Shown here piece after piece: positions 10,090 to 32,477 of a stretch of DNA of 64,000 bases (the first letter of the stretch is position 1; the number at the start of each line of letters is the position of its first letter). The notes under the pieces were generated by a model. That model worked only from the letters and a program-made list of their open reading frames with translations. It was not told where the DNA came from and did not search any database. The position numbers and the translations under genes are program-made. This DNA comes from Macrostomum lignano (lineage: Eukaryota). The DNA is taken from assembly GCA_002269645.1 (NCBI GenBank), contig NIVC01000255.1, positions 682,001 to 746,000 on the forward strand. The letters are read 5' to 3'.

Positions 10090-10405
10090 CATTACCGTCA
10101 AGGTCACTGATTTCAGCCTCAAGGTCAGTGATTTGAGGGTCAAGGGGACTGATTTTTGGGTCAATATCACTCATTTGAGGGTAAATGTCACTGATTTGAG
10201 GGTCAATGTCAACTGATTTGAGGGTCAATATCACTGATTTGAGGGTAAATGTCACTGATTTGAGGGTAAATATCACTGATTTGAGGGTCAATGTCAACTG
10301 ATTTGAGGGTCAATGTCGCTGATTTGAGGGTCAAGGTCACTTCTTTCAGCCCCAAGGTCACTGATTTAAGTGTTAAGGTCACAGATTTCAGCCTCAAGGT
10401 CACTG
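10090..10405. repeat. 21-bp minisatellite (TCACTGATTTGAGGGTCAATG)
   Basis: Direct reading. Confidence 0.9.
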
Positions 10406-10703
10406 ATGAGAGACTTATGTCAGTGACTTGAGCGCTGCTTTGATCACTGTCTGAACAGACTGAATTAAATTAAATTCACACTCAGACAAGAACTCTTTTG
10501 CCTCTTTGCTAGCTGAAAATTCTTACGAAGTTTCTGCACCGTGGCAACCAATGGCAGTGAACTTAGCTGCTCCATCTGTTCCCAGCTTCCTTCGAGAGCA
10601 TAAGATCACTTCCCCCCACCCATGGTAACCGCAGCTGAAGCAGAGAGGCTGAAAATCTTCAAGTTTTTTATCAACAGAAAATTGAGTTGAACAGCAGTTC
10701 AGA

Positions 10704-13700
10704 ATGGCTCTTCAAGCACTCGACAACTTCTTGTTGAAGAAAAGCCTGCTTTTAATCTTTGCTGCTTCTTCAAGTCTGCTTCTGGTTTCTGGCACTGTAG
10801 CTACTCAAGTCTCAGGTAGGGTTGAGTGAGCTTGATTTGATTAACTTTCTTAGTTGTTTTGTTGGGGCACTGGAGAGCCAAAAGTTAGTTAAAGTGAAGG
10901 TAATTTGATTCGGTGTTACGTGTACTTCGTGGGAAAACTCTTTTTTAGGATGTCACAGCAATGACATTTTGAGCAGTTTCCTAGGGACTAAATTGACCAC
11001 TTTTAATTTTGAATAGTTTCTAATTGCGTTTTGAAAGATTTTTTAACATCAGAAAGTCTCACAAACTACAGAAACTCCCACAAACTAAACAGAAACTCTC
11101 ACAAACTAAAAAGAAACTCTCACAAACTAAACAGAAACTCTCACAAACTAAACAGAAACTCTCACAAACTAAACAGAAACTCTCACAAACTAAACAGAAA
11201 CTCTCACAAACTAAACAGAAAATCTCACAAACTAAACAGAAACTCTCACAAACTAGACAGAAACTCTCATAAACTAGACAGAAACTCTCATAAACTAGAC
11301 AGAAACTCTCACAAACTAAACAGAAACACTCACAAACTAAACAGAAACTCCCACAAACTAGACAGAAACTCCCACAAACTAGACAGAAACTCTCACAAAC
11401 TACACAGAAACTCTCACAAACTAAACAGAAACTCTCACAAACTAAACAGAAACTCTCACAAACTACAAAAAACTCTCACAACCTAAACAGAAACTCTCAC
11501 AAACTACAAAAACTCTCACAAACTACAAAAACTCTCACAAACTACAGAAACTCTCACAAACTACAAAAACTCTCACAAACTACAAAAACTCTCACAAACT
11601 ACAGAAACTCTCACATGCTACAAAAACTCTCACAAACTACAAAAACTCTCACAAACTACAGAAACTCTCACAAACTACAAAAACTCTCACAAACTACAGA
11701 AACTCTCACAAACTACAAAAACTCTCACAACCTAAACAGAAACTCTCACAAACTACAAAAACTCTCACAAACTACAAAAAACTCTCACAACCTAAACAGA
11801 AACTCTCACAAACTACAAAAACTCTCACAAACTACAAAAACTCTCACAAACTACAGAAACTCTCACAAACTACAAAAACTCTCACAAACTACAAAAACTC
11901 TCACAAACTACAGAAACTCTCACATGCTACAAAAACTCTCACAAACTACAAAAACTCTCACAAACTACAGAAACTCTCACAAACTACAAAAACTCTCACA
12001 AACTACAGAAACTCTCACAAACTACAAAAACTCTCACAACCTAAACAGAAACTCTCACAAACTACAAAAACTCTCACAAACTACAGAAACTATCACAAGC
12101 TACAAAAACTCTCACAAACTACAAAAACTCTCACAAACTACAGAAACTCTCACAAACTACAAAAACTCTCACAAACTACAGAAACTCTCACAAGCTACAA
12201 AAACTCTCACAAACTACAAAAACTCTCACAAACTACAGAAACTCTCACAAACTACAAAAACTACTACTGAGCAGTGGAGCTCAGAGCCTGCAAACTGTAA
12301 CCCAACTAGCAAAACCTGTTAAGCCGTAAAACTCAGGAAAGTTTTAAATAATCCTTCACCAGGGTTTGATGCATTTTCAACTCAACAGCATCAATTTATC
12401 ATCGAATCTGAGCAGGAGTTTCCTAGAAAGCTCCCTTAATCCGTCTCAGTGTGCATTGAGCTGGAGCTTGGATCATGAGGATTAACTGAAAACTCTACGA
12501 TTCGAAGAAAAACTTCTCAAAGATTCCCAACTAGAAAAATTCAACAAATACCTCAACAGTCTGCTGTCAGTAGTAAAAAAAGAATAATAACGACGATTTT
12601 ATTACTCGTAGTTAATTGTAAAAAATCGAAATAAAGAATTTCTCTGACAGCGAAAATTAATTATAATGCTGCTGAATTAAAGCAGAAAAACACCTGCATA
12701 AAAAAGTGTTTTTTGTCAAAAAAGAAAAACATATTTTGATGCTCGCGTGCACCCAGTAGGCAGCAAGCAGATGATCAGGAGAGGCCTAAAAGCTCACCAC
12801 AGTCTGAATAACGAAGTTATCCCAGTCAATATAGATCAGAGGTAGAGCAAAGGGCCGCTGAGGCGTGTTACAAAGCGAGGCGACGTGGCGTTTTGAGTTT
12901 TTGCTTCGAGCTGCTCCACAAATTCGACCAGGCAAGGCGGGAGGAAGACTGAGAATAGAGAGACAAGCTGCGAGCTGAGTCTCTCTCTTCCCCATGGTCT
13001 GTTGACAAATAAACTGACGAATTGCGAGTGGCGAATCTCTACTAAAAAGGCCATACCGTCGCTTGTGGATTCCCTTAGCTACACGCCTCTCGAACAAGGG
13101 ACATCACAGACATGCACGGCAGACCAACTGGACTCTTGACTCTTTGTTCCATCATAGTCTTTGTAGCCAGCAGATGCAGCGAATGCTCTGCGTTCAATCA
13201 GTCCACTTGGACTGACGAACAAAGACTTCTGCATCGAATATTGTCCTCGTACGATCCGGCATCCAGGCCGACAATTCATGCTGGCAAAACTGTTGAAGTT
13301 CGATTCCAGATAGCCATGGTGCAGATCTCTCAGCTGGTGAGTTTGGTTTATCCTCCCTGATTCCCCATCTATCACCACCCCAGCAGGAGCGCTCGAACCC
13401 AGGCCTGGTCGGGTTAAACCGGACGAACAGAGACTGATGGAGGCGATGATGCAGCGTTACGACGCCTCCGTTCGTCCGGTGATCAACGCGTCCGATCAGG
13501 TCACGGTGACGTTCGGCTTCGCACTGATCCTCATCACGGATATGGTTTGCCATACCTGCAGTCATTTATCAAGATTTTTATACCTTAATTATCTAACTTG
13601 AAAGCAACTGAAAGCTTCTGAATAATATTATCCATTATTGTTTTCTTTCTGTTTCAGGACGAGGTCAACCAGGTTCTAACGACAAACGTTTGGCTTGAAC

Positions 13701-16700
13701 AGGTTGGCTTGAAATGTACTTTTAGAAATGAGCGATCCGTCATAGCACTGACTTAAAGTCCTTGAAGACATTCTGATAATCACATATCACATATCGCGGT
13801 GTATCTTAAGAAAATTGCAGTATAATAGAGACACTAAAAGCGATTTATCTTAGAAATAAGTTTGAGACCACTGTGTGCATAGCAGAGTGTGTTAAACTGG
13901 GTAGCAACAGTCTATGGCCAGCCCTGCTGACCAACCCAAAAGCTGGGCAGCGATAGTCTATGGCCAGCCCTGCTGACCAACCCAAAAGCTGGGCAGCGAT
14001 AGTCTATGGCCAGCCCTGCTGACCAACCCAAAAGCTGGGCAGCGATAGTCTATGGCCAGCCCTGCTGACCAGCCCAAAACTGGGCAGCGATAGTCTATGG
14101 CCAGCCCTGCTGACCAACCCAGACTGCAAGCTTAAAAATCCACAGATTATTTTTTCGACCTCCCTAGCAACACTGCTGCTGTCATCTTAGCAGTAATATA
14201 TGGTTGGTCAGAGGGGGACTAAGACGATTTTATCATGGTTTGGTGACCATAAGATAAATTATAAATATTTAATAAAACATCTTGCACTTTCCAACTATAG
14301 GCGGCAAAAAAGGCATTGACAGATAAAAAGAAGAAAAGTTTTATCCTTAAAGAGAAGCATGATTGCTTTCTATAACTTCTCTCGCAGAATTCGATTCTGC
14401 AACTCAATTTTCTAGAGAGAATGAAATGTATAAACATGTACTTTTTGTCTATGCAGAACCTAATGATTGCTAATGTGCATAGGCTTAGGGAATTTCGTGT
14501 TCCTATTAGGGGAGCAGCTGGGATGCGAGACTGCCCGATCTGCTCTGTCGCTGTTCGAGTTTAGCGAGTGCTTCACCGCCGCCGCCACTTCACTTGAGAA
14601 TCCAGCTGCCTAAAAGAGATGAAGGAGCGGCTTTTGAAGGGATTGAGTCGTGACTTACAAACAGTTCGAAAGTTCGATCTTCGAATCTTTAAAGTTTGGA
14701 AACTTGAAAACTGAATGAAACTTAAGGTTGATTTTTTTACCTTGGATTCATGAAGTCATAAAATCGATTGTTAGGATTCAAATTAGATGTGTCAGTAGCG
14801 CTTAAGTAGATGTGTCAGTAGTGCTTAAGTAGATGTGTCAGTAGTGCTTAAGTAGATGTGTCAGTAGTGCTTAAGTAGATGTGTCAGTAGTGCTTAATTA
14901 GATGTGTCAGTAGTGCTTAATTAGATGTGTCAGTAGTGCTTAAGTAGATGTGTCAGTAGTGCTTAAGTAGATGTGTCAGTAGTGCTTAAGTAGATGTGTC
15001 AGTAGTGCTTAAGTAGATGTGTCAGTAGTGCTTAAGTAGATGTGTCAGTAGTGCTTAATTAGATGTGTCAGTAGTGCTTAATTAGATGTGTCAGTAGTGC
15101 TTAAGTAGATGTGTCAGTAGTGCTTAAGTAGATGTGTCAGTAGTGCTTAAGTAGATGTGTCAGTAGTGCTTAAGTAGATGTGTCAGTAGTGCTTAAGTAG
15201 ATGTGTCAGTAGTGCTTAAGTAGATGTGTCAGTAGTGCTTAATTAGATGTGTCAGTAGTGCTTAATTAGATGTGTCAGTAGTGCTTAAGTAGATGTGTCA
15301 GTAGTGCTTAATTAGATGTGTCAGTAGCGCTTAAGTAGATGTGTCAGTAGTGCTTAAGTAGATGTGTCAGTAGTGCTTAAGTAGATGTGTCAGTAGTGCT
15401 TAATTAGATGTGTCAGTAGTGCTTAATTAGATGTGTCAGTAGTGCTTAATTAGATGTGTCAGTAGTGCTTAATTAGATGTGTCAGCAGTGCTTAAGTAGA
15501 TGTGTCAGTATGTGTCCGTCAAAACACAGAATTGAATTTTACTGTATGTCCTGACATATCCTAAGAATCAATTACTGATTATCACAAATTAAACATAGAG
15601 ACCTGTCCACCTGTCAATCAAAACAGGAGTGGCACGACGAGCGGCTGCACTGGGACCCGAAGGACTACAACGGTTTGGAGGTGCTGCGAGTGCCATGTCA
15701 GAAAATCTGGCTGCCTGACATTGTGCTGTACAACAGGTGACATAGTGATTCTACAGACACTGACACACTGATTCTACAGGCACTGACATACTGATTCTAC
15801 TGACACTGACACACTGATTCTACAGACACTGACACACTGATTCTACAGGCACTGACACACTGATTCTACAGACACTGACACACTGATTCTACAGACACTG
15901 ACACACTGATTCTACAGACACTGACACACTGATTCTACAGACACTGACACACTGATTCTACTGACACTGACACACTGATTCTACAGACACTGACACACTG
16001 ATTCTACAGACACTGACACACTGATTCTACAGGCACTGACACACTGATTCTACAGACACTGACACACTGATTCTACAGACACTGACACACTGATTCTACA
16101 GACACTGACACACTGATTCTACTGACACTGACACACTGATTCTACAGACACTGACACACTGATTCTACAGACACTGACACACTGATTCTACAGGCACTGA
16201 CACACTGATTCTACAGACACTGACACACTGATTCTACAGACACTGACACACTGATTCTACAGGCACTGACACACTGATTCTACAGACACTGACACACTGA
16301 TTCTACAGACACTGACACACTGATTCTACAGACACTGACACACTGATTCTACAGACACTGACACACTGATTCTACAGACACTGACACACTGATTCTACTG
16401 ACACTGACACACTGATTCTACAGACACTGACACACTGATTCTACAGACACTGACACACTGATTCTACAGGCACTGACACACTGATTCTACAGACACTGAC
16501 ACACTGATTCTACAGACACTGACACACTGATTCTACAGACACTGACACACTGATTCTACTGACACTGACACACTGATTCTACAGGCACTGACACACTGAT
16601 TCTACAGACACTGACACACTGATTCTACAGTCACTGACACATCAAAGTCAACCGTGACCCCCCCCTACACCTGACGCAGTGCTGATGACTTCACCACAGG

Positions 16701-18646
16701 CTACATGCAGAGCAAGGCGATGGTGGACGCGAACGGCACCGTGTTTTGGCCCCACCCGCCAAGCTGCGATCCACCTGCAAGATCGACATCACGTATTTCC
16801 CGTTTGACGATCAGATTTGCACCATGAAGTTCGGCTCGTGGACCTACGATGGTTATCAAGTGAACATCACCAAGAAGTTGGTTAGATCTTCTGTTCAACC
16901 ATCGAGAAATTTTTATTTAAATCACGTGACATCTTGACAACACTTTCAGGCGCGAGGAAGTGGACTTTCAAATTATGTTCAAAGCGGAGAGTGGAATCTG
17001 ATTCGAATCGATGTGGAACGGCAGGAGGTGAGATCAGTGACCTGGATTTGGAACCTAAGGAAATTGATGTGGAACCTTAAGAAGTAGATATGGAACCTTG
17101 GGAAGTAGATATGGAACTGATGGAAATAGACATGGAACTGATGGAAATAGACATGGAACTGATGGAAATAGATATGGAACTGATGGAAACAGATATGGAG
17201 CTGATGGAAATAAACATGGAACTGATGGAAATAGATATGGAACTGATGGAAATAGACATGGAACTGATGGAAATAGACATGGAACTGATGGAAATAGACA
17301 TGGAACTGATGGAAAAAGACATGGAACTGATGGAAATAGACATGGAACTGATGGAAATGGACTTGGAACTGATGGAAATAGACACGGAACTGATGGAAAT
17401 AGACATGGAACTGATGGAAATAGACACGGAACTGATGGAAATAGATATGGAACTGGAGTGAAATACTGCAATAAATCTATTCGAAACACCAGGGTACTTC
17501 GTTAGGAGTCTTACATGTTAGCAAGTATTGACGCGTATCTCGTAATTTTATTTAGTTTGACTAAACAAGGCCAACAAAAGGTATAAGTTTACAGAGCCTA
17601 GTAAACTTATTAACGCCGAGTACCCAGGGAATGGCAGTGGGCAGTCCAGCGGCCGCCCAAGTCTCTTTAATCAAATTTCTGCCTGGGAAGGCTGCTGCTG
17701 CAGCGGCCGAGCTCTCAATATTTGTGAAGTAGAATTTTGTCTGGACCGCTCCAGATGGTGTCGAGTGAGAGCAGAGCAGATCATGAACTTGATAGGAGCC
17801 TTGGAGCCTTGAGCAAAAGGTTCAATAAGTCTGCTTTGAGTTCTGTTACTGCATTGCAAAGTTGTTCAGCTCGGATGCTTGTTGATCTAGTCTAATTTCC
17901 GGTCTGCTAAGGATCTATTCTCATCGATCGGGGGCTAATCTCAGCTGTATCAGACAAATCTAATCTCAGCGAAATCTAATCTGAGCTGTCTCAGGCAAAA
18001 TCTAATCTCAGCTGTCTCAGACTAAATCTAATTTCAGCTGTATCAGGCTAAATCTAGTCTCAGCTAAATCTAATGTCAGCTGTCTCAGGCTAAATCTAAT
18101 CTCAGCTGTCTCACCTAAATCTAATTTAAGCTGTCTCACCTAAATCTAATCTCAGCTGTCTCAGGCTAAATCTAATCTCAGCTGTCTCAGGCTAAATCTA
18201 ATCTCAGCTGTCTCAGGCTAAATCTAATCTCAGCTGTCTCAGGCTAAATCTAATCTCAGCTGTCTCAGGCTAAATCTAATCTCAGCTGTCTCAGGCTAAA
18301 TCTAATCTCAGCTGTCTCAGGCTAAATCTAATATCAGCTAAATCTAATCTCAGCTAAATCTAATCTCAGCTGTCTCAGGCTAAATCTAATCTCAGCTGTC
18401 TCAGGCTAAAATCTATGAATCTCAGCTAAATCTAATCTCAGCTGTCTCAGGCTAAATCTAATCTCAGGTGTCTCAGTTAAATCTAACCCAAATGTCACCA
18501 GCCAATAAATAAAAAGCTCTACCTCTCCAAAACCATTCCAGACCGTCTACCCCATCAGCCGGTGCCCTACCCGGACATCAAGTTCCACATAGTGATCCGC
18601 AGGCGCACCCTGTATACTGTTCAACATCATCTTCCCTGCCTGTGGC
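10704..18646 (+). CDS. Nicotinic acetylcholine receptor subunit (Cys-loop channel), extracellular domain, isoform using distal exon 1a; truncated by assembly gap
   Basis: Exons 10704-10815 (signal-like), 13387-13544 ([14 protein letters not shown]), 13658-13702 (45 nt, [15 protein letters not shown]), 15627-15736 (110 nt, [16 protein letters not shown]), 16680 to about 16877 (Cys loop [22 protein letters not shown]), 16950-17027 (SNYVQSGEW), 18542-18646 ([16 protein letters not shown]). No TM1-TM4 exons are visible. 1-nt deletions at about 16750 and near the gap edge. Confidence 0.9.
11050..12262. repeat. 19/21-bp minisatellite (AAACTCTCACAAACTA[AA]CAG) in nAChR intron 1a
   Basis: 21-bp variant on the left and 19-bp variant on the right. 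Confidence 0.95.
13112..13336 (+). CDS. Alternative first coding exon (1b) of the nAChR gene: signal peptide plus alpha1 helix and beta1 strand
   Basis: ATG at 13112 opens [27 protein letters not shown]...[21 protein letters not shown]...[11 protein letters not shown]. It ends at a GTGAGT donor in phase 0, in frame with the common exon at 13658. Confidence 0.8.
13909..14121. repeat. 46-bp tandem repeat in an nAChR intron
   Basis: AGTCTATGGCCAGCCCTGCTGACCAACCCAAAAGCTGGGCAGCGAT, about 4.5 copies. Confidence 0.92.
14784..15510. repeat. 23-bp minisatellite (TAGATGTGTCAGTAGTGCTTAAG)
   Basis: About 31 near-perfect copies. Confidence 0.97.
15742..16640. repeat. 23-bp minisatellite (CTGACACACTGATTCTACAGACA) filling an nAChR intron
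   Basis: Starts a few bases after the donor at 15737 and ends about 40 bp before the acceptor at 16679. Confidence 0.97.
17085..17455. repeat. 21-bp minisatellite (ATGGAACTGATGGAAATAGAC)
   Basis: Source of the MELMEID ORFs. Confidence 0.95.
17935..18485. repeat. 26-bp minisatellite (CTAAATCTAATCTCAGCTGTCTCAGG)
   Basis: Direct reading. Confidence 0.93.
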
Positions 18647-19450
18647 NNNNNNNNNNNNNNNNNNNNNNNNNNNNNNNNNNNNNNNNNNNNNNNNNNNNNN
18701 NNNNNNNNNNNNNNNNNNNNNNNNNNNNNNNNNNNNNNNNNNNNNNNNNNNNNNNNNNNNNNNNNNNNNNNNNNNNNNNNNNNNNNNNNNNNNNNNNNNN
18801 NNNNNNNNNNNNNNNNNNNNNNNNNNNNNNNNNNNNNNNNNNNNNNNNNNNNNNNNNNNNNNNNNNNNNNNNNNNNNNNNNNNNNNNNNNNNNNNNNNNN
18901 NNNNNNNNNNNNNNNNNNNNNNNNNNNNNNNNNNNNNNNNNNNNNNNNNNNNNNNNNNNNNNNNNNNNNNNNNNNNNNNNNNNNNNNNNNNNNNNNNNNN
19001 NNNNNNNNNNNNNNNNNNNNNNNNNNNNNNNNNNNNNNNNNNNNNNNNNNNNNNNNNNNNNNNNNNNNNNNNNNNNNNNNNNNNNNNNNNNNNNNNNNNN
19101 NNNNNNNNNNNNNNNNNNNNNNNNNNNNNNNNNNNNNNNNNNNNNNNNNNNNNNNNNNNNNNNNNNNNNNNNNNNNNNNNNNNNNNNNNNNNNNNNNNNN
19201 NNNNNNNNNNNNNNNNNNNNNNNNNNNNNNNNNNNNNNNNNNNNNNNNNNNNNNNNNNNNNNNNNNNNNNNNNNNNNNNNNNNNNNNNNNNNNNNNNNNN
19301 NNNNNNNNNNNNNNNNNNNNNNNNNNNNNNNNNNNNNNNNNNNNNNNNNNNNNNNNNNNNNNNNNNNNNNNNNNNNNNNNNNNNNNNNNNNNNNNNNNNN
19401 NNNNNNNNNNNNNNNNNNNNNNNNNNNNNNNNNNNNNNNNNNNNNNNNNA
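18647..19450. other. Assembly gap (804 N)
   Basis: Run of N. ORFs in the supplied track that cross it are artefacts. Confidence 1.
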
Positions 19451-19974
19451 AGAGACGATCTGTTTTGGGTGAGTATTATCTGCTGTAGAAGTATTGTACA
19501 CCAGAGTACTTGTGTTACTTGGTAGAGCACAATTCAAAAGCAATGCAACAATCTCAGTGGCATTGTTGGGACAAAGCTACAAACGCAATGAATAGTAAAC
19601 ACAGCCCAGCCTAGCTCAAGGCTAGTAATTTGTTGGGCATTTATTGGGACATTGCAGCCAGGCCTATTTTTTGAACAGCATTTGTTGGGTCGCACTTATT
19701 GGGACAATACTGATTCTAATCGCGACTACTTCTGAGTTCTGACTTTTCAAAACAGACCCAGCATTAGTTGAACACGTTCTATTAAAGGGTTCCTTTATAG
19801 CCTATTAATGATTACTAAAGCAAGCCTATCTTAATTGATTTTTTCCTCGCAGATTCTGAAGTCAGCCACGCCAGCGACATGCCTAAGAGACAAGAATGCG
19901 CTTTAACGATCAGCAGCGAGCATTCTGATCTCGCCGCTGCATCCGTCATTTTTCACTTGCTGCTGCAGCAGCAG

Positions 19975-20016
<42 letters not shown>

Positions 20017-20623
20017 GCTATCCGTGCAGGCAGTCAGTCTATTTGTGAATTTTCTGGTGGATCTGAAGAAAACCCGTCCGGCACAGGATTAAAGAGAAAG
20101 AGACGATCTGTTTTGGGTGAGTATTATCTGCTGTAGAAGTATTGTACACCAGAGTACTTGTGTTACTTGGTAGAGCACAATTCAAAAGCAATGCAACAAT
20201 CTCAGTGGCATTGTTGGGACACAAGCTACAAACGCAATGAATAGTAAACACAGCCCAGCCTAGCTCAAGGCTAGTAATTTGTTGGGCATTTATTGGGACA
20301 TTGCAGCCAGGCCTATTTTTGAACAGCATTTGTTGGGTCGCACTTATTGGGACAATACTGATTCTAATCGCGACTACTTCTGAGTTCTGACTTTTCAAAA
20401 CAGACCCAGCATTAGTTGAACACGTTCTATTAAAGGGTTCCTTTATAGCCTATTAATGATTACTAAAGCAAGCCTATCTTAATTGATTTCTTTTCCTCGC
20501 AGATTCTGAAGTCAGCCACGCCAGCGACATGCCTAAGAGACAAGAATGCGCTTTAACGATCAGCAGCGAGCATTCTGATCTCGCCGCTGCATCCGTCATT
20601 TGGTTCACTTGCTGCTCACAAGC

Positions 20624-20659
<36 letters not shown>

Positions 20660-21266
20660 CTATCCGTGCAGGCAGTCAGTCTATTTGTGAATTTTCTGGT
20701 GGATCTGAAGAAAACCCGTCCGGCACAGGATTAAAGAGAAAGAGACGATCTGTTTTGGGTGAGTATTATCTGCTGTAGAAGTATTGTACACCAGAGTACT
20801 TGTGTTACTTGGTAGAGCACAATTCAAAAGCAATGCAACAATCTCAGTGGCATTGTTGGGACACAAGCTACAAACGCATGAATAGTAAACACAGCCCAGC
20901 CTAGCTCAAGGCTAGTAATTTGTTGGGCATTTATTGGGACATTGCAGCCAGGCCTATTTTTTGAACAGCATTTGTTGGGTCGCACTTATTGGGACAATAC
21001 TGATTCTAATCGCGACTACTTCTGAGTTCTGACTTTTCAAAACAGACCCAGCATTAGTTGAACACGTTCTATTAAAGGGTTCCTTTATAGCCTATTAATG
21101 ATTACTAAAGCAAGCCTATCTTAATTGATTTCTTTTCCTCGCAGATTCTGAAGTCAGCCACGCCAGCGACATGCCTAAGAGACAAGAATGCGCTTTAACG
21201 ATCAGCAGCGAGCATTCTGATCTCGCCGCTGCATCCGTCATTTGGTTCACTTGCTGCTCACAAGCC

Positions 21267-21314
<48 letters not shown>

Positions 21315-21923
21315 GCTATCCGTGCAGGCAGTCAGTCTATTTGTGAATTTTCTGGTGGATCTGAAGAAAACCCGTCCGGCACAGGATTAAAGAGAAAGAG
21401 ACGATCTGTTTTGGGTGAGTATTATCTGCTGTAGAAGTATTGTACACCAGAGTACTTGTGTTACTTGGTAGAGCACAATTCAAAAGCAATGCAACAATCT
21501 CAGTGGCATTGTTGGGACACAAGCTACAAACGCAATGAATAGTAAACACAGCCCAGCCTAGCTCAAGGCTAGTAATTTGTTGGGCATTTATTGGGACATT
21601 GCAGCCAGGCCTATTTTTTGAACAGCATTTGTTGGGTCGCACTTATTGGGACAATACTGATTCTAATCGCGACTACTTCTGAGTTCTGACTTTTCAAAAC
21701 AGACCCAGCATTAGTTGAACACGTTCTATTAAAGGGTTCCTTTATAGCCTATTAATGATTACTAAAGCAAGCCTATCTTAATTGATTTCTTTTCCTCGCA
21801 GATTCTGAAGTCAGCCACGCCAGCGACATGCCTAAGAGACAAGAATGCGCTTTAACGATCAGCAGCGAGCATTCTGATCTCGCCGCTGCATCCGTCATTT
21901 GGTTCACTTGCTGCTCACAAGCC

Positions 21924-21965
<42 letters not shown>

Positions 21966-22573
21966 CTATCCGTGCAGGCAGTCAGTCTATTTGTGAATTT
22001 TCTGGTGGATCTGAAGAAAACCCGTCCGGCACAGGATTAAAGAGAAAGAGACGATCTGTTTTGGGTGAGTATTATCTGCTGTAGAAGTATTGTACACCAG
22101 AGTACTTGTGTTACTTGGTAGAGCACAATTCAAAAGCAATGCAACAATCTCAGTGGCATTGTTGGGACACAAGCTACAAACGCAATGAATAGTAAACACA
22201 GCCCAGCCTAGCTCAAGGCTAGTAATTTGTTGGGCATTTATTGGGACATTGCAGCCAGGCCTATTTTTTGAACAGCATTTGTTGGGTCGCACTTATTGGG
22301 ACAATACTGATTCTAATCGCGACTACTTCTGAGTTCTGACTTTTCAAAACAGACCCAGCATTAGTTGAACACGTTCTATTAAAGGGTTCCTTTATAGCCT
22401 ATTAATGATTACTAAAGCAAGCCTATCTTAATTGATTTCTTTTCCTCGCAGATTCTGAAGTCAGCCACGCCAGCGACATGCCTAAGAGACAAGAATGCGC
22501 TTTAACGATCAGCAGCGAGCATTCTGATCTCGCCGCTGCATCCGTCATTTGGTTCACTTGCTGCTCACAGCGC

Positions 22574-22612
<39 letters not shown>

Positions 22613-23221
22613 GCTATCCGTGCAGGCAGTCAGTCTATTTGTGAATTTTCTGGTGGATCTGAAGAAAACCCGTCCGGCACAGGATTAAAGAGAAAGAGAC
22701 GATCTGTTTTGGGTGAGTATTATCTGCTGTAGAAGTATTGTACACCAGAGTACTTGTGTTACTTGGTAGAGCACAATTCAAAAGCAATGCAACAATCTCA
22801 GTGGCATTGTTGGGACACAAGCTACAAACGCAATGAATAGTAAACACAGCCCAGCCTAGCTCAAGGCTAGTAATTTGTTGGGCATTTATTGGGACATTGC
22901 AGCCAGGCCTATTTTTTGAACAGCATTTGTTGGGTCGCACTTATTGGGACAATACTGATTCTAATCGCGACTACTTCTGAGTTCTGACTTTTCAAAACAG
23001 ACCCAGCATTAGTTGAACACGTTCTATTAAAGGGTTCCTTTATAGCCTATTAATGATTACTAAAGCAAGCCTATCTTAATTGATTTCTTTTCCTCGCAGA
23101 TTCTGAAGTCAGCCACGCCAGCGACATGCCTAAGAGACAAGAATGCGCTTTAACGATCAGCAGCGAGCATTCTGATCTCGCCGCTGCATCCGTCATTTGG
23201 TTCACTTGCTGCTCACAAGCC

Positions 23222-23260
<39 letters not shown>

Positions 23261-23860
23261 GCTATCCGTGCAGGCAGTCAGTCTATTTGTGAATTTTCTG
23301 GTGGATCTGAAGAAAACCCGTCCGGCACAGGATTAAAGAGAAAGAGACGATCTGTTTTGGGTGAGTATTATCTGCTGTAGAAGTATTGTACACCAGAGTA
23401 CTTGTGTTACTTGGTAGAGCACAATTCAAAAGCAATGCAACAATCTCAGTGGCATTGTTGGGACACAAGCTACAAACGCAATGAATAGTAAACACAGCCC
23501 AGCCTAGCTCAAGGCTAGTAATTTGTTGGGCATTTATTGGGACATTGCAGCCAGGCCTATTTTTTGAACAGCATTTGTTGGGTCGCACTTATTGGGACAA
23601 TACTGATTCTAATCGCGACTACTTCTGAGTTCTGACTTTTCAAAACAGACCCAGCATTAGTTGAACACGTTCTATTAAAGGGTTCCTTTATAGCCTATTA
23701 ATGATTACTAAAGCAAGCCTATCTTAATTGATTTCTTTTCCTCGCAGATTCTGAAGTCAGCACGCCAGCGACATGCCTAAGAGACAAGAATGCGCTTTAA
23801 CGATCAGCAGCGAGCATTCTGATCTCGCCGCTGCATCCGTCATTTGGTTCACTTGCTGCT

Positions 23861-23907
<47 letters not shown>

Positions 23908-24506
23908 GCTATCCGTGCAGGCAGTCAGTCTATTGTGAATTTTCTGGTGGATCTGAAGAAAACCCGTCCGGCACAGGATTAAAGAGAAAGAGACGATCTG
24001 TTTTGGGTGAGTATTATCTGCTGTAGAAGTATTGTACACCAGAGTACTTGTGTTACTTGGTAGAGCACAATTCAAAAGCAATGCAACAATCTCAGTGGCA
24101 TTGTTGGGACACAAGCTACAAACGCAATGAATAGTAAACACAGCCCAGCCTAGCTCAAGGCTAGTAATTTGTTGGGCATTTATTGGGACATTGCAGCCAG
24201 GCCTATTTTTTGAACAGCATTTGTTGGGTCGCACTTATTGGGACAATACTGATTCTAATCGCGACTACTTCTGAGTTCTGACTTTTCAAAACAGACCCAG
24301 CATTAGTTGAACACGTTCTATTAAAGGGTTCCTTTATAGCCTATTAATGATTACTAAAGCAAGCCTATCTTAATTGATTTCTTTTCCTCGCAGATTCTGA
24401 AGTCAGCCACGCCAGCGACATGCCTAAGAGACAAGAATGCGCTTTAACGATCAGCAGCGAGCATTCTGATCTCGCCGCTGCATCCGTCATTTGGTTCACT
24501 TGCTGC

Positions 24507-24549
<43 letters not shown>

Positions 24550-25150
24550 GCTATCCGTGCAGGCAGTCAGTCTATTTGTGAATTTTCTGGTGGATCTGAA
24601 GAAAACCCGTCCGGCACAGGATTAAAGAGAAAGAGACGATCTGTTTTGGGTGAGTATTATCTGCTGTAGAAGTATTGTACACCAGAGTACTTGTGTTACT
24701 TGGTAGAGCACAATTCAAAAGCAATGCAACAATCTCAGTGGCATTGTTGGGACACAAGCTACAAACGCAATGAATAGTAAACACAGCCCAGCCTAGCTCA
24801 AGGCTAGTAATTTGTTGGGCATTTATTGGGACATTGCAGCCAGGCCTATTTTTTGAACAGCATTTGTTGGGTCGCACTTATTGGGACAATACTGATTCTA
24901 ATCGCGACTACTTCTGAGTTCTGACTTTTCAAAACAGACCCAGCATTAGTTGAACACGTTCTATTAAAGGGTTCCTTTATAGCCTATTAATGATTACTAA
25001 AGCAAGCCTATCTTAATTGATTTCTTTTCCTCGCAGATTCTGAAGTCAGCCACGCCAGCGACATGCCTAAGAGACAAGAATGCGCTTTAACGATCAGCAG
25101 CGAGCATTCTGATCTCGCCGCTGCATCCGTCATTTGGTTCACTTGCTGCT

Positions 25151-25195
<45 letters not shown>

Positions 25196-25804
25196 GCTAT
25201 CCGTGCAGGCAGTCAGTCTATTTGTGAATTTTCTGGTGGATCTGAAGAAAACCCGTCCGGCACAGGATTAAAGAGAAAGAGACGATCTGTTTTGGGTGAG
25301 TATTATCTGCTGTAGAAGTATTGTACACCAGAGTACTTGTGTTACTTGGTAGAGCACAATTCAAAAGCAATGCAACAATCTCAGTGGCATTGTTGGGACA
25401 CAAGCTACAAACGCAATGAATAGTAAACACAGCCCAGCCTAGCTCAAGGCTAGTAATTTGTTGGGCATTTATTGGGACATTGCAGCCAGGCCTATTTTTT
25501 GAACAGCATTTGTTGGGTCGCACTTATTGGGACAATACTGATTCTAATCGCGACTACTTCTGAGTTCTGACTTTTCAAAACAGACCCAGCATTAGTTGAA
25601 CACGTTCTATTAAAGGGTTCCTTTATAGCCTATTAATGATTACTAAAGCAAGCCTATCTTAATTGATTTCTTTTCCTCGCAGATTCTGAAGTCAGCCACG
25701 CCAGCGACATGCCTAAGAGACAAGAATGCGCTTTAACGATCAGCAGCGAGCATTCTGATCTCGCCGCTGCATCCGTCATTTGGTTCACTTGCTGCTCACA
25801 AGCC

Positions 25805-25846
<42 letters not shown>

Positions 25847-26447
25847 GCTATCCGTGCAGGCAGTCAGTCTATTTGTGAATTTTCTGGTGGATCTGAAGAA
25901 AACCCGTCCGGCACAGGATTAAAGAGAAAGAGACGATCTGTTTTGGGTGAGTATTATCTGCTGTAGAAGTATTGTACACCAGAGTACTTGTGTTACTTGG
26001 TAGAGCACAATTCAAAAGCAATGCAACAATCTCAGTGGCATTGTTGGGACACAAGCTACAAACGCAATGAATAGTAAACACAGCCCAGCCTAGCTCAAGG
26101 CTAGTAATTTGTTGGGCATTTATTGGGACATTGCAGCCAGGCCTATTTTTTGAACAGCATTTGTTGGGTCGCACTTATTGGGACAATACTGATTCTAATC
26201 GCGACTACTTCTGAGTTCTGACTTTTCAAAACAGACCCAGCATTAGTTGAACACGTTCTATTAAAGGGTTCCTTTATAGCCTATTAATGATTACTAAAGC
26301 AAGCCTATCTTAATTGATTTCTTTTCCTCGCAGATTCTGAAGTCAGCCACGCCAGCGACATGCCTAAGAGACAAGAATGCGCTTTAACGATCAGCAGCGA
26401 GCATTCTGATCTCGCCGCTGCATCCGTCATTTGGTTCACTTGCTGCT

Positions 26448-26491
<44 letters not shown>

Positions 26492-27092
26492 GCTATCCGT
26501 GCAGGCAGTCAGTCTATTTGTGAATTTTCTGGTGGATCTGAAGAAAACCCGTCCGGCACAGGATTAAAGAGAAAGAGACGATCTGTTTTGGGTGAGTATT
26601 ATCTGCTGTAGAAGTATTGTACACCAGAGTACTTGTGTTACTTGGTAGAGCACAATTCAAAAGCAATGCAACAATCTCAGTGGCATTGTTGGGACACAAG
26701 CTACAAACGCAATGAATAGTAAACACAGCCCAGCCTAGCTCAAGGCTAGTAATTTGTTGGGCATTTATTGGGACATTGCAGCCAGGCCTATTTTTTGAAC
26801 AGCATTTGTTGGGTCGCACTTATTGGGACAATACTGATTCTAATCGCGACTACTTCTGAGTTCTGACTTTTCAAAACAGACCCAGCATTAGTTGAACACG
26901 TTCTATTAAAGGGTTCCTTTATAGCCTATTAATGATTACTAAAGCAAGCCTATCTTAATTGATTTCTTTTCCTCGCAGATTCTGAAGTCAGCCACGCCAG
27001 CGACATGCCTAAGAGACAAGAATGCGCTTTAACGATCAGCAGCGAGCATTCTGATCTCGCCGCTGCATCCGTCATTTGGTTCACTTGCTGCT

Positions 27093-27136
<44 letters not shown>

Positions 27137-27736
27137 GCTATCCGTGCAGGCAGTCAGTCTATTTGTGAATTTTCTGGTGGATCTGAAGAAAACCCGTCCG
27201 GCACAGGATTAAAGAGAAAGAGACGATCTGTTTTGGGTGAGTATTATCTGCTGTAGAAGTATTGTACACCAGAGTACTTGTGTTACTTGGTAGAGCACAA
27301 TTCAAAAGCAATGCAACAATCTCAGTGGCATTGTTGGGACACAAGCTACAAACGCAATGAATAGTAAACACAGCCCAGCCTAGCTCAAGGCTAGTAATTT
27401 GTTGGGCATTTATTGGGACATTGCAGCCAGGCCTATTTTTTGAACAGCATTTGTTGGGTCGCACTTATTGGGACAATACTGATTCTAATCGCGACTACTT
27501 CTGAGTTCTGACTTTTCAAAACAGACCCAGCATTAGTTGAACACGTTCTATTAAAGGGTTCCTTTATAGCCTATTAATGATTACTAAAGCAAGCCTATCT
27601 TAATTGATTTCTTTTCCTCGCAGATTCTGAAGTCAGCAACCGCCAGCGACATGCCTAAGAGACAAGAATGCGCTTTAACGATCAGCAGCGAGCATTCTGA
27701 TCTCGCCGCTGCATCCGTCATTTGGTTCACTTGCTC

Positions 27737-27775
<39 letters not shown>

Positions 27776-29032
27776 GCTATCCGTGCAGGCAGTCAGTCTA
27801 TTTGTGAATTTTCTGGTGGATCTGAAGAAAACCCGTCCGGCACAGGATTAAAGAGAAAGAGACGATCTGTTTTGGGTGAGTATTATCTGCTGTAGAAGTA
27901 TTGTACACCAGAGTACTTGTGTTACTTGGTAGAGCACAATTCAAAAGCAATGCAACAATCTCAGTGGCATTGTTGGGACACAAGCTACAAACGCAATGAA
28001 TAGTAAACACAGCCCAGCCTAGCTCAAGGCTAGTAATTTGTTGGGCATTTATTGGGACATTGCAGCCAGGCCTATTTTTTGAACAGCATTTGTTGGGTCG
28101 CACTTATTGGGACAATACTGATTCTAATCGCGACTACTTCTGAGTTCTGACTTTTCAAAACAGACCCAGCATTAGTTGAACACGTTCTATTAAAGGGTTC
28201 CTTTATAGCCTATTAATGATTACTAAAGGCAAGCCTATCTTAATTGATTTCTTTTCCTCGCAGATTCTGAAGTCAGCACGCCAGCGACATGCCTAAGAGA
28301 CAAGAATGCGCTTTAACGATCAGCAGCGAGCATTCTGATCTCGCCGCTGCATCCGTCATTTGGTTCACTTGCTGCTCACAAGCCGCAGCAGCAGCCAGCA
28401 GCAGCAGCAGCAGCAGCAGCAGCCGCTATCCGTGCAGGCAGTCAGTCTATTTGTGAATTTTCTGGTGGATCTGAAGAAAACCCGTCCGGCACAGGATTAA
28501 AGAGAAAGAGACGATCTGTTTTGGGTGAGTATTATCTGCTGTAGAAGTATTGTACACCAGAGTACTTGTGTTACTTGGTAGAGCACAATTCAAAAGCAAT
28601 GCAACAATCTCAGTGGCATTGTTGGGACACAAGCTACAAACGCAATGAATAGTAAACACAGCCCAGCCTAGCTCAAGGCTAGTAATTTGTTGGGCATTTA
28701 TTGGGACATTGCAGCCAGGCCTATTTTTTGAACAGCATTTGTTGGGTCGCACTTATTGGGACAATACTGATTCTAATCGCGACTACTTCTGAGTTCTGAC
28801 TTTTCAAAACAGACCCAGCATTAGTTGAACACGTTCTATTAAAGGGTTCCTTTATAGCCTATTAATGATTACTAAGCAAGCCTATCTTAATTGATTTCTT
28901 TTCCTCGCAGATTCTGAAGTCAGCCACGCCAGCGACATGCCTAAGAGACAAGAATGCGCTTTAACGATCAGCAGCGAGCATTCTGATCTCGCCGCTGCAT
29001 CCGTCATTTGGTTCACTTGCTGCTCACAAGCC

Positions 29033-29071
<39 letters not shown>

Positions 29072-29680
29072 GCTATCCGTGCAGGCAGTCAGTCTATTTG
29101 TGAATTTTCTGGTGGATCTGAAGAAAACCCGTCCGGCACAGGATTAAAGAGAAAGAGACGATCTGTTTTGGGTGAGTATTATCTGCTGTAGAAGTATTGT
29201 ACACCAGAGTACTTGTGTTACTTGGTAGAGCACAATTCAAAAGCAATGCAACAATCTCAGTGGCATTGTTGGGACACAAGCTACAAACGCAATGAATAGT
29301 AAACACAGCCCAGCCTAGCTCAAGGCTAGTAATTTGTTGGGCATTTATTGGGACATTGCAGCCAGGCCTATTTTTTGAACAGCATTTGTTGGGTCGCACT
29401 TATTGGGACAATACTGATTCTAATCGCGACTACTTCTGAGTTCTGACTTTTCAAAACAGACCCAGCATTAGTTGAACACGTTCTATTAAAGGGTTCCTTT
29501 ATAGCCTATTAATGATTACTAAGGCAAGCCTATCTTAATTGATTTCTTTTCCTCGCAGATTCTGAAGTCAGCCACGCCAGCGACATGCCTAAGAGACAAG
29601 AATGCGCTTTAACGATCAGCAGCGAGCATTCTGATCTCGCCGCTGCATCCGTCATTTGGTTCACTTGCTGCTCACAAGCC

Positions 29681-29719
<39 letters not shown>

Positions 29720-30327
29720 GCTATCCGTGCAGGCAGTCAGTCTATTTGTGAATTTTCTGGTGATCTGAAGAAAACCCGTCCGGCACAGGATTAAAGAGAA
29801 AGAGACGATCTGTTTTGGGTGAGTATTATCTGCTGTAGAAGTATTGTACACCAGAGTACTTGTGTTACTTGGTAGAGCACAATTCAAAAGCAATGCAACA
29901 ATCTCAGTGGCATTGTTGGGACACAAGCTACAAACGCAATGAATAGTAAACACAGCCCAGCCTAGCTCAAGGCTAGTAATTTGTTGGGCATTTATTGGGA
30001 CATTGCAGCCAGGCCTATTTTTTGAACAGCATTTGTTGGGTCGCACTTATTGGGACAATACTGATTCTAATCGCGACTACTTCTGAGTTCTGACTTTTCA
30101 AAACAGACCCAGCATTAGTTGAACACTTTCTATTAAAGGGTTCCTTTATAGCCTGTTAATGATTACTAAGGCAAGCCTATCTTAATTGATTTCTTTTCCT
30201 CGCAGATTCTGAAGTCAGCAACGCCAGCGACATGCCTAAGAGACAAGAATGCGCTTTAACGATCAGCAGCGAGCATTCTGATCTCGCCGCTGCATCCGTC
30301 ATTTGGTTCACTTGCTGCTCACAAGCC

Positions 30328-30381
<54 letters not shown>

Positions 30382-30420
30382 GCTATCTGTGCAGCAGTCA
30401 GTTAATTCATGAGTTTTCTG
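19451..30420 (+). repeat. Tandem array of about 647-bp units (17 near-complete copies plus a partial one), each with a (GCA)n tract and exon-like splice signals
   Basis: The acceptor TTTCTTTTCCTCGCAG recurs with exon starts from 19853 to about 30206 (mean spacing about 647). Each copy except the last has a G|GTGAGT donor. The last copy is diverged. Confidence 0.97.
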
Positions 30421-32395: not shown

Positions 32396-32477
32396 ACAGA
32401 GGACTCCTATGTAGCTCCGTGCAGTTTAGCCAGAGTTCATAAAAAATCTATTAGAATCCTCACCAACTCTGCACTGC

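What the first reader, a model, noticed from the sequence alone, without database searches (positions are those of the whole stretch)
10704..13702. One nAChR gene with two complete, mutually exclusive N-termini
Seen: two paralogous copies of the alpha1-helix/beta1 segment sit in tandem. Copy A is [21 protein letters not shown]...[13 protein letters not shown] (13112-13336, with its own ATG and signal peptide). Copy B is [21 protein letters not shown]...[13 protein letters not shown] (13387-13544). Both end in phase 0 and fit the common 45-nt exon at 13658. Copy B needs a phase-1 entry, so A-to-B splicing is out of frame. A signal-like exon missed by the ORF track (10704-10815, [38 protein letters not shown]) supplies exactly that phase-1 donor. 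Inference: alternative promoters yield two subunits with different N-terminal helix and beta1 strand. That region contributes to subunit assembly interfaces and lies just upstream of loop D.
Basis: partly seen in the sequence, partly recalled or inferred. Interest (0 to 1): 0.75.

Follow-up and report, generated by a model that had tools for sequence, protein, structure and literature searches.

The report
Receptor gene with two alternative starts
A flatworm acetylcholine-receptor gene carries two interchangeable front ends, each with its own secretion signal; oysters, scallops, a snail and a parasitic flatworm have the same layout, so it is ancient and probably functional, but it has not been described in print.

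Summary
The window is Macrostomum lignano DNA carrying the 5' two-thirds of a nicotinic receptor subunit gene.

The gene has two paralogous copies of the exon encoding the alpha1 helix and beta1 strand:
- Copy A (13112-13336) is fused to its own ATG and signal peptide and ends in phase 0.
- Copy B (13387-13544) lies 50 nt downstream and needs 1 nt from an upstream exon.
- The only suitable upstream exon in 13 kb is 10704-10815 (ATG, signal peptide, phase-1 donor).
- Joining A to B gives a frameshift and a stop.

The same layout occurs in four orthologues: Crassostrea virginica, Ylistrum balloti, Batillaria attramentaria and the monogenean Cichlidogyrus. In each, an ATG-signal-copy A exon is followed by a 29-86 nt spacer and a phase-1 copy B.

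In C. virginica, RefSeq lists both isoforms. The B-type signal exon lies 18.5 kb upstream of A. Independent oyster transcript contigs diverge exactly at the exon 2/3 junction.

Copy A of Macrostomum groups with copy A of the fluke Opisthorchis (93.5% bootstrap), so it is not a relic.

Three things remain open: no M. lignano RNA evidence was available, promoter choice versus SL trans-splicing is undecided, and the frameshifts further downstream are assembly errors. This is a new variant of a known kind, of moderate interest.

The parts
10704..10815 (+). Exon 1: start codon and signal peptide of isoform B (37 codons + 1 nt, phase-1 donor CAG|gtaggg)
   Evidence: It is the only phase-1 ATG/hydrophobic/GT candidate in the 13.4 kb upstream. 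It is positionally and phase-equivalent to C. virginica exon 1 (L009 5001-5061).
13112..13336 (+). Exon A: alternative first coding exon. Own ATG and signal peptide (13112-13210) fused to copy A of the alpha1 helix/beta1 strand (13211-13336); phase-0 donor CTG|gtgagt.
   Evidence: Pfam Neur_chan_LBD from profile position 1. 60% identical to Opisthorchis copy A, with which it groups at 93.5% bootstrap.
13337..13386 (+). 50-nt spacer between the A donor and the B acceptor. It holds a branch-point-like ctgat about 26 nt upstream of the acceptor.
   Evidence: Equivalent spacers are 44 nt (oyster), 50 nt (scallop), 86 nt (snail) and 29 nt (monogenean), while other introns of the mollusc genes are 9-49 kb.
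13387..13544 (+). Exon B: copy B of the alpha1 helix/beta1 strand. Internal exon of 158 nt that needs 1 nt from an upstream exon; tandem acceptors at 13384/13387; weak donor ATG|gtttgc.
   Evidence: 52-55% identical to mollusc copy B and 48% to Cichlidogyrus copy B. GC3 is 0.81, like the constitutive exons.
13658..13702 (+). Common 45-nt exon 3 ([15 protein letters not shown]; beta1-beta2 loop and loop D strand)
   Evidence: It is a single copy in every locus examined.
15627..15736 (+). Exon 4 (110 nt, EWHDERLHW...DIVLYN)
   Evidence: 100% identical to M. lignano protein P0012.
16680..16876 (+). Fused exon 5/6 with the Cys-loop ([15 protein letters not shown]). One base is missing in the C run at about 16749-16752.
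16950..17027 (+). Exon 7 ([26 protein letters not shown]). One A is missing in the A run at about 16967.
18542..18646 (+). Exon 8 (loop C without the Cys pair, start of TM1). Four single-base deletions; it runs into the N gap at 18647-19449.
   Evidence: The rest of the gene (TM1-TM4, present in P0012) is absent from the window.

Best explanation
The locus is the 5' part of a Macrostomum lignano nicotinic (Cys-loop) receptor subunit gene. It belongs to a highly conserved spiralian orthogroup, about 70% identical to mollusc 'alpha-10-like' subunits.

Exon 2, which encodes the alpha1 helix, the helix-to-beta1 linker and the beta1 strand, was duplicated in tandem long ago.
- The upstream copy (A) is fused to its own start codon and signal peptide. 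It acts as an alternative first coding exon that splices directly to the common 45-nt exon 3.
- The downstream copy (B) is an internal exon. It receives the start codon and signal peptide from a separate exon 1, which lies 2.3 kb upstream of A in this window.

Two features keep the copies mutually exclusive. A ends in phase 0 while B needs phase-1 entry, so joining A to B gives a premature stop. The A donor also sits only 29-86 nt (50 nt here) from the B acceptor, too close to the B branch point for efficient splicing.

The choice of 5' end therefore decides which N-terminal module the subunit carries. The 5' end could be set by a separate transcription start or, in Macrostomum, possibly by SL trans-splicing upstream of A.

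What is shown: the architecture, the phases, its conservation in five species, and both isoforms in oyster annotation and transcript contigs.

What is inferred: use of both isoforms in M. lignano, steric exclusion, and the functional consequences. The likely consequences are altered assembly or trafficking through the alpha1 helix, an altered complementary-face 'loop G' on beta1, and altered residues abutting the beta1-beta2 gating loop.
For: Identity of the locus:
- The best hits are M. lignano proteins. P0012 is 100% identical over exon 4, including intron read-through.
- Both isoforms match Pfam Neur_chan_LBD. The closest solved structures are nAChR alpha4/alpha7, aligned from the alpha1 helix onward.

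Gene logic:
- Both isoforms translate cleanly, and joining A to B gives a stop.

Conserved architecture:
- In M. lignano, C. virginica, Y. balloti, B. attramentaria and Cichlidogyrus, the A exon starts with ATG and its length is 0 mod 3.
- The spacers are 50, 44, 50, 86 and 29 nt.
- The B exon length is 2 mod 3 in all five.
- The intron from B to exon 3 ranges from 113 nt to 49 kb.
- Opisthorchis also has an ATG + signal + copy A exon.

Expression and annotation in oysters:
- C. virginica RefSeq has A-type and B-type isoforms, with exon 1 lying 18.5 kb upstream of A.
- An A-type full-length protein, P0260, is seen on 28 contigs.
- Contigs L002 and L003 diverge exactly at the exon 2/3 junction.

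Age of the duplication (NJ bootstrap):
- Mlig_A + Ofel_A: 93.5%.
- Mlig_A + Mlig_B: 1.3%.
- Within-species A+B clades in molluscs: 0-4%.

Exon 1 is the only candidate in the 13 kb upstream.
Against: - No M. lignano RNA or protein evidence exists for either N-terminus.
- Copy A has much lower GC3 (0.48) than copy B and the constitutive exons (0.75-0.83; Fisher p=0.003). This could mean weaker constraint or lower use of A in this species.
- The B donor (gtttgc) is weak by a generic donor matrix.
- Opisthorchis shows no copy B, so one isoform can be lost.
- The annelid Lamellibrachia has two copies 770 nt apart, and the upstream one lacks an ATG. The fused state is therefore not universal.
- Deep A-to-A and B-to-B orthology between flatworms and molluscs is not resolved by the 42-aa tree.
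- The assembly has indel errors nearby, so phases in the unconserved signal-peptide parts cannot be cross-checked.
Confidence: 0.76

Rival explanations
1. Only one N-terminus is used in M. lignano and the other is a recently silenced relic of the ancestral pair. Copy A would be the more likely relic, given its relaxed codon usage. Copy B is the alternative, given its weak donor.
For: - GC3 is 0.48 for A versus 0.81 for B.
- The B donor scores -2.1.
- No M. lignano N-terminal protein exists in the databases.
- Loss of B in Opisthorchis shows that loss does happen.
Against: - Both reading frames are intact over 75 and 52 codons, and both hit the Pfam profile equally well.
- A keeps flatworm-specific conserved residues (ASRPT, VRFQ, QIxQL) shared with Opisthorchis.
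- Other introns of this gene also use gtt donors (gttggc, gttggt).
Confidence: 0.13
2. This is a classical mutually exclusive exon pair with a single promoter. Exon 1 (10704-10815) splices either to an internal acceptor inside A (exon start 13158 or 13167) or to B. The ATG and hydrophobic stretch at the start of A are then not used as a translation start.
For: - The acceptors giving exon starts 13158 and 13167 have 70-75% pyrimidine tracts and keep the frame.
- A phase-1 AG also exists in the scallop A signal region.
- In Lamellibrachia both copies appear to be internal exons.
Against: - An ATG plus hydrophobic signal is fused to copy A in six species.
- Oyster A-type and B-type transcripts have unrelated 5' ends, and RefSeq starts the A isoform at the A exon.
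- Copy A of Cichlidogyrus has no phase-1 AG in its signal region (by reading).
- Signal-peptide codons are pyrimidine-rich, so chance acceptor-like sites are expected.
Confidence: 0.07
3. The locus is a dead or misassembled gene copy. It has frameshifts in exons 5-8, is truncated by a gap and is followed by 11 kb of satellite, so the two N-termini have no current function here.
For: - There are six frame disruptions between 16749 and 18640, and the TM1-TM4 exons are missing.
- M. lignano DV1 has large duplicated genome blocks (PMC5730564).
Against: - All six disruptions are single-base deletions in homopolymer or dinucleotide runs close to the N gap.
- There is only one amino-acid substitution and no stop relative to P0012. 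That ratio indicates long-read consensus error, not decay.
- P0012 comes from another assembly version, shows different indels in the same exon, and carries the complete TM1-TM4.
- Published assemblies are error-prone: ML2 has 32% error-free bases (PMC5730564).
- The neighbouring prenyltransferase gene is frame-intact.
Confidence: 0.04

Closest known systems
Insect nAChR alpha6 exons 3a/3b and 8a-c, and alpha4 exons 4/4' (tandem-duplicated mutually exclusive exons; PMC2064938)
   Same: These are also Cys-loop receptor subunit genes. Tandem exon duplication gives alternative versions of part of the ligand-binding domain near loop D. The arrangement is conserved across orders and has been linked to assembly and ligand-binding differences.
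   Different: In insects the duplicated exons are internal, and both alternatives share one start codon and signal peptide. Here the duplicated exon is exon 2 (alpha1 helix and beta1 strand), and the upstream copy carries its own ATG and signal peptide, so exon choice is tied to the choice of 5' end. The 45-nt exon that is duplicated in insect alpha6 is single-copy here.
Insect RDL exon 3/6 and GluCl exon 3 alternative exons (PMC2064938; PMC13512814)
   Same: They are mutually exclusive duplicated exons that change N-terminal extracellular residues near loop D of a pentameric channel.
   Different: They occur in anion channels, the exons are internal, and there is no coupling to a separate signal peptide or 5' end.
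RefSeq isoforms of Crassostrea virginica 'neuronal acetylcholine receptor subunit alpha-10-like' (XP_022332562.2 A type; XP_022332559.1 B type)
   Same: It is the orthologous gene with the same architecture, phases and short spacer.
   Different: These are automated models only. No paper describing them was found. The oyster subunit keeps the loop-C Cys pair (alpha type), whereas the Macrostomum one does not.
Steric-hindrance mutually exclusive splicing, e.g. alpha-tropomyosin exons 2/3 (own knowledge, not checked here)
   Same: The donor of the upstream exon lies too close to the branch point of the downstream exon, so the two cannot be joined.
   Different: Here this is only inferred from spacer lengths of 29-86 nt. 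Frame incompatibility provides a second safeguard, and the upstream exon is also a first exon.
C. elegans unc-49 (one GABA-receptor locus encoding several subunits by alternative splicing; own knowledge)
   Same: One gene gives more than one receptor subunit through duplicated alternative modules.
   Different: unc-49 shares the N-terminus and swaps the C-terminal halves. Here the N-terminal module is swapped.

Membership tests
[quoted passage not shown] | [quoted passage not shown] | tested here: met
   E=1e-36 for both isoforms, starting at profile position 1; best solved relatives are nAChR alpha4, alpha3 and alpha7.
[quoted passage not shown] | Cys-loop (two Cys separated by 13 residues) | tested here: met
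   [15 protein letters not shown] lies in exon 5/6.
[quoted passage not shown] | Four transmembrane segments (PF02932) | tested here: inconclusive
   The window ends in the N gap at the start of TM1. The near-identical M. lignano protein P0012 has TM1-TM4 and the GEK ring.
nAChR alpha-type subunit | Vicinal cysteines in loop C (YxCC) | tested here: not met
   The window and P0012, P0017 and P0004 read TVYPIS(P/T)VPYPD, whereas mollusc orthologues have Y(Y)xCC. By definition this is a non-alpha subunit.
Tandem-duplicated mutually exclusive exons | Adjacent homologous exons encoding the same protein segment | tested here: met
   The two 42-aa segments align without gaps at 38% identity, and both match orthologous exon 2.
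Tandem-duplicated mutually exclusive exons | Inclusion of both, or of neither, breaks the reading frame | tested here: met
   joining A to B gives stops, and joining exon 1 directly to exon 3 gives stops.
Tandem-duplicated mutually exclusive exons | Both alternatives are internal exons with identical entry and exit phases | tested here: not met
   A is a first coding exon (ATG, phase-0 end). B enters in phase 1. The arrangement is therefore a hybrid of an alternative first exon and a duplicated exon.
Tandem-duplicated mutually exclusive exons | Transcripts contain exactly one of the two | not testable with these tools
   No M. lignano RNA data were available. In oysters both single-copy forms are seen.
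Alternative first exons / alternative promoters | Each 5' exon has its own start codon and splices to a common downstream exon | tested here: met
   Upstream in-frame stops precede both ATGs (read).
Alternative first exons / alternative promoters | Separate transcription start sites | not testable with these tools
   Support is only indirect. Oyster A-type and B-type contigs have unrelated 5' UTRs, and oyster exon 1 lies 18.5 kb upstream of A. SL trans-splicing is an alternative in M. lignano (PMC8629364).

The most novel reading that the evidence does not exclude
A module more than 500 million years old, shared by flatworms and molluscs, turns one receptor gene into two subunits. The choice of 5' end (promoter or trans-splice site) dictates which signal peptide and which alpha1-helix/beta1-strand module is made. 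A deliberately tiny spacer (29-86 nt, kept short while neighbouring introns grew to tens of kb) together with a phase mismatch enforces exclusivity. The two isoforms would differ in assembly partners, in the complementary-face loop G and in gating coupling, giving cell-type-specific receptors.
Probability: 0.5. Interest if true: 0.62.

Novelty: new variant of a known kind. Interest (0 to 1): 0.52.

Why it matters
If both isoforms are used, spiralian animals obtain two nicotinic receptor subunits from one gene by swapping the very N-terminus. That includes the signal peptide, the alpha1 helix (implicated in subunit biogenesis and assembly) and the beta1 strand. The beta1 strand carries 'loop G' of the complementary binding face and leads into the beta1-beta2 gating loop.

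It is a clean natural experiment for asking what this little-studied region does. It is also an unusually old example of exon duplication coupled to the choice of 5' end.

There is a practical consequence for annotation:
- Public gene models for this orthogroup are often wrong.
- Both copies are concatenated in Octopus, Batillaria and Cichlidogyrus.
- The N-terminus is missing in M. lignano, Opisthorchis, Mizuhopecten and Lamellibrachia.
- Recognising the architecture would fix these models, including receptors of parasitic flatworms that are of interest as drug targets.

Tried and rejected
- Genomic loci for Octopus vulgaris P0005 and Patella vulgata P0003 could not be fetched.
- Searches with a B-type profile and with the A isoform found no M. 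lignano protein carrying either N-terminus. Short queries returned only short proteins.
- A scan for the B-type signal exon in the 10 kb upstream of scallop A, the 2.5 kb upstream of Cichlidogyrus A, and upstream of the Lamellibrachia copies found nothing convincing. The exon is probably further away, as in oyster (18.5 kb).
- I considered an internal donor inside A that would give B the A signal peptide. The only phase-1 GT (ctt t|gt tcc) truncates the signal peptide and gives TGA with the 13387 acceptor, so I rejected it for M. lignano. Oyster RefSeq X1 uses an internal A donor in another frame, which is probably a minor or spurious form.
- I considered the SL's terminal ATG supplying the start for B. 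It is out of frame at 13384 and 13387 and would lack a signal peptide, so I rejected it. At the AG 13077-78 acceptor the SL ATG would be in frame with A. I kept this only as a curiosity.
- The pseudogene reading was rejected.
- A relaxed search for copy B in Opisthorchis between A and exon 3 found nothing.
- The 42-aa tree cannot resolve deep A/B orthology between phyla.
- Eight literature searches found no description of this exon-2 pair.


Full report
**Observation.** I re-read 10500-14200 and rebuilt the exons by script.
- Exon 1 is 10704-10815: ATG, 37 codons + 1 nt, donor CAG|gtaggg.
- Copy A is 13112-13336: ATG, 75 codons, donor CTG|gtgagt, phase 0.
- Copy B is 13387-13544: 158 nt, needs 1 nt from upstream, donor ATG|gtttgc, phase 0.
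- The common 45-nt exon is 13658-13702.

Spliced in silico, exon 1+B+3+4+5 and A+3+4+5 give uninterrupted receptor sequence. Joining A to B gives a stop after 16 codons, and joining exon 1 directly to exon 3 is also out of frame. Both ATGs are preceded by in-frame stops (TGA within 10680-10703; TAG at 13076-78; read). A and B align without gaps over 42 residues (38% identity). Each matches Pfam Neur_chan_LBD from profile position 1 with the same score (126.8 and 126.3 bits).

**What the window is.** A search with the conceptual extracellular domain gave M. lignano proteins as the closest relatives. P0012 is 100% identical over exon 4 and even contains the same intron read-through (DLSTCQSKQ), so the window is M. 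lignano.

The gene belongs to a very conserved spiralian orthogroup, about 70% identical to scallop, limpet and octopus 'alpha-10-like' or 'alpha-1-A-like' subunits. All members share the exon 3 sequence DEVNQVLT.

The rest of the gene model in the window is:
- exon 4: 15627-15736
- fused exon 5/6: 16680-16876
- exon 7: 16950-17027
- exon 8: 18542-18646

Exon 8 runs into an N gap (18647-19449), which is followed by about 11 kb of a roughly 650-bp satellite. TM1-TM4 are missing from the window but present in P0012.

**Assembly quality.** Exons 5-8 contain six frame disruptions. All are single-base deletions in short homopolymer runs (about 16749, about 16967, about 18563, and three within 18612-18640). 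Against them stands a single amino-acid substitution and no stop relative to P0012. P0012, from another assembly version, has different indels in the same exon. Published M. lignano assemblies are PacBio-based and error-prone, with only 32% (ML2) or 64% (Mlig_3_7) error-free bases (PMC5730564). The neighbouring prenyltransferase gene is frame-intact. I conclude that these are consensus errors near a contig end, not pseudogenisation. The caveat is that phases in unconserved segments (the signal peptides and the B extension) cannot be cross-checked by homology.

**Exon 1.** I scanned for ATG-initiated ORFs with a hydrophobic stretch that end at a reasonable GT donor. In the 13.4 kb upstream the scan returned exactly two hits, 10704-10815 (phase 1) and exon A (phase 0). 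The background over the whole window and both strands is about 5 per 128 kb x 3 phases. A chance phase-1 candidate this close is therefore unlikely (about 0.03-0.13).

**Comparative evidence.** This is the main result. I fetched orthologous loci and measured the same features.

| Species | A exon | Spacer | B exon length | Intron from B to exon 3 |
|---|---|---|---|---|
| M. lignano | ATG, 225 nt | 50 nt | 158 nt | 113 nt |
| Crassostrea virginica | ATG, 186 nt | 44 nt | 146 nt | 11.3 kb |
| Ylistrum balloti (scallop) | ATG, 183 nt | 50 nt | 155 nt | 49.3 kb |
| Batillaria attramentaria (snail) | ATG, 255 nt | 86 nt | 179 nt | 8.8 kb |
| Cichlidogyrus casuarinus (monogenean flatworm) | ATG, 198 nt | 29 nt | 125 nt | 202 nt |

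In all five species:
- The A exon begins with ATG plus a hydrophobic signal and ends in phase 0.
- The B exon length is 2 mod 3, so it needs 1 nt from an upstream exon.
- The spacer is tiny, although the other introns in the molluscs are kilobases long.

Three further species vary on this pattern:
- The liver fluke Opisthorchis felineus also has an ATG-signal-copy A exon, but no detectable copy B.
- The tubeworm Lamellibrachia has two copies 770 nt apart. The upstream one has no ATG, and both seem to be internal.
- The Octopus protein model P0005 contains both copies in tandem.

**Expression evidence in oysters.** The cluster of P0002 contains C. virginica RefSeq isoforms.
- XP_022332562.2 starts MALLAWMYVSLFPMVSFCVIPDEQRLL... 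(A type).
- XP_022332559.1 starts MSSASCFSVTVMYLLIMLQR|VALVKKIPDEQKLL... (B type).

On the genome, the B-type signal exon lies at L009 5001-5061, with donor AGAG|gtgagc in phase 1. That is 18.5 kb upstream of the A exon (23586-23771), and it joins copy B at 23816.

Independent Logan contigs from two sequencing runs of a related oyster carry the B-type (L002) and A-type (L003) 5' ends. They are 99.4% identical from exon 3 onward and unrelated upstream, and the break falls at the exon 2/3 junction. An A-type full-length protein, P0260, recurs on 28 contigs.

**Age of the duplication.** I built a neighbour-joining tree of the 42-residue segments with 1000 bootstraps.
- Mlig_A groups with Opisthorchis A at 93.5%.
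- Mlig_A + Mlig_B is recovered in 1.3% of replicates.
- Within-species A+B pairs in scallop, octopus and snail are recovered in 0-4%.

The copies therefore predate the divergence of the flatworm classes and, separately, of the mollusc classes. Flatworm A copies share derived residues (ASRPT, VRFQ, and ...QL instead of ...DM before DEVNQ). The tree cannot resolve whether flatworm A is orthologous to mollusc A. The shared micro-architecture (fused signal, order, phases, short spacer) argues for a single origin before the flatworm-mollusc split, but convergence is not excluded.

**How it most likely works.**
- Transcripts that include exon 1 splice over A into B. The B branch point must lie in the 50-nt spacer or in the A 3' end; ctgat about 26 nt upstream of the acceptor is a candidate.
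- Transcripts whose 5' end lies between exon 1 and the A ATG use the strong A donor. That donor is too close to the B branch point to pair with B, so it joins the strong acceptor of exon 3.
- The phase mismatch makes any A-to-B product nonsense.

Whether the A 5' end comes from an internal promoter or from SL trans-splicing is open. About 30% of M. lignano genes are trans-spliced, and the SL ends in ATG (PMC8629364). An AG at 13077-78 would place that ATG in frame with A.

A third route is frame-compatible: exon 1 splicing into internal acceptors in A (exon starts 13158 or 13167). I consider it unlikely, because the A-linked ATG and signal are conserved and oyster isoforms have different 5' ends.

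**Functional inference** (from established Cys-loop receptor structure; alignment). The swapped segment covers the alpha1 helix, the linker and the beta1 strand up to the residues that abut the beta1-beta2 loop (DEVNQ). Beta1 carries 'loop G' of the complementary face. The Macrostomum subunit lacks the loop-C Cys pair, so it is a non-alpha subunit that would contribute precisely that face. The isoforms should therefore differ in assembly or trafficking, and possibly in pharmacology and gating.

**Caveats specific to M. lignano.**
- No transcript or protein with either N-terminus is in the databases searched.
- Copy A has GC3 of 0.48, against 0.81 for B and 0.75-0.83 for the constitutive exons (p=0.003). 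This suggests different constraint or usage.
- The B donor is weak by a generic matrix, although gtt donors occur elsewhere in the gene.

**Comparison with what is known.** Tandem-duplicated alternative exons are well known in insect Cys-loop receptor genes: alpha6 exons 3 and 8, alpha4 exon 4, RDL exons 3 and 6, and GluCl exon 3 (PMC2064938). This case differs in which exon is duplicated. It also differs in that the upstream copy has captured its own start codon and signal peptide, which ties exon choice to the 5' end. The isoforms exist as automated RefSeq models in oyster. I found no paper describing them or their conservation. The survey of lophotrochozoan nAChR genes (PMC6896357) does not mention them.

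**Verdict.** It is a new variant of a known kind, of moderate interest.

Noticed in passing
window 16749-16752, ~16967, ~18563, 18612-18640: Six single-base deletions in short homopolymer runs break the frame of exons 5-8. There is only one amino-acid difference from the M. lignano protein P0012. This is the pattern of long-read consensus errors near a contig end.
   Followed up: yes
window 18647-30400: An N gap of 803 bases is followed by about 17 copies of a 645-651-bp satellite with an internal (GCA/CAG)n tract. The TM1-TM4 exons of the receptor are missing, so the scaffold has a gap or a misjoin inside the gene.
   Followed up: partly
window 10097-10407, 11050-12262, 13897-14121, 14784-15510, 15738-16641, 17045-17455, 17964-18486: Nearly every intron of the receptor gene, and the region just upstream of exon 1, holds a 19-52-nt minisatellite array. 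The largest is 61 copies of a 19-mer between exon 1 and exon A.
   Followed up: partly
window 18542-18600; proteins P0012, P0017, P0004: The Macrostomum orthologues lack the loop-C vicinal cysteines (TVYPISPVPYPD), whereas mollusc orthologues keep YxCC. The flatworm subunit is non-alpha by definition.
   Followed up: partly
window 13211-13336 versus 13419-13544: Copy B has GC3 of 0.81, like the constitutive exons. Copy A has 0.48 and exon 1 has 0.41 (Fisher p=0.003 for A versus B). This is unexplained; it may reflect different expression level or constraint.
   Followed up: partly
window 13077-13111: An AG acceptor (ttcccttag|) lies 33 nt upstream of the A start codon, with no stop in between. 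The M. lignano spliced leader ends in ATG and would be in frame with exon A if it were trans-spliced there.
   Followed up: no
window 32430-35274 (+) and 40269-43279 (+): The neighbouring genes are a prenyltransferase beta subunit (Pfam PF00432, frame-intact exons) and a nuclear hormone receptor (zf-C4 plus a weak ligand-binding-domain match).
   Followed up: partly
P0005 (Octopus vulgaris), P0246/L008 (Batillaria), P0018/L006 (Cichlidogyrus); P0006, P0010, P0036, P0017: Public gene models of this orthogroup are often wrong at the 5' end. Three of them concatenate both exon-2 copies, and four lack the N-terminus entirely.
   Followed up: yes
L009 23558-23672: C. virginica RefSeq isoform X1 starts at an ATG 28 nt upstream of the A start, in another frame. 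It uses a GT donor inside exon A to reach copy B, giving an N-terminus without a clear signal peptide. It is probably a minor or spurious form.
   Followed up: no
L007 2140-10034; L005 4534-5556: Opisthorchis felineus keeps only the A-type exon, with no copy B found. Lamellibrachia has two copies 770 nt apart, and the upstream one lacks a start codon. The module has therefore been remodelled in some lineages.
   Followed up: partly
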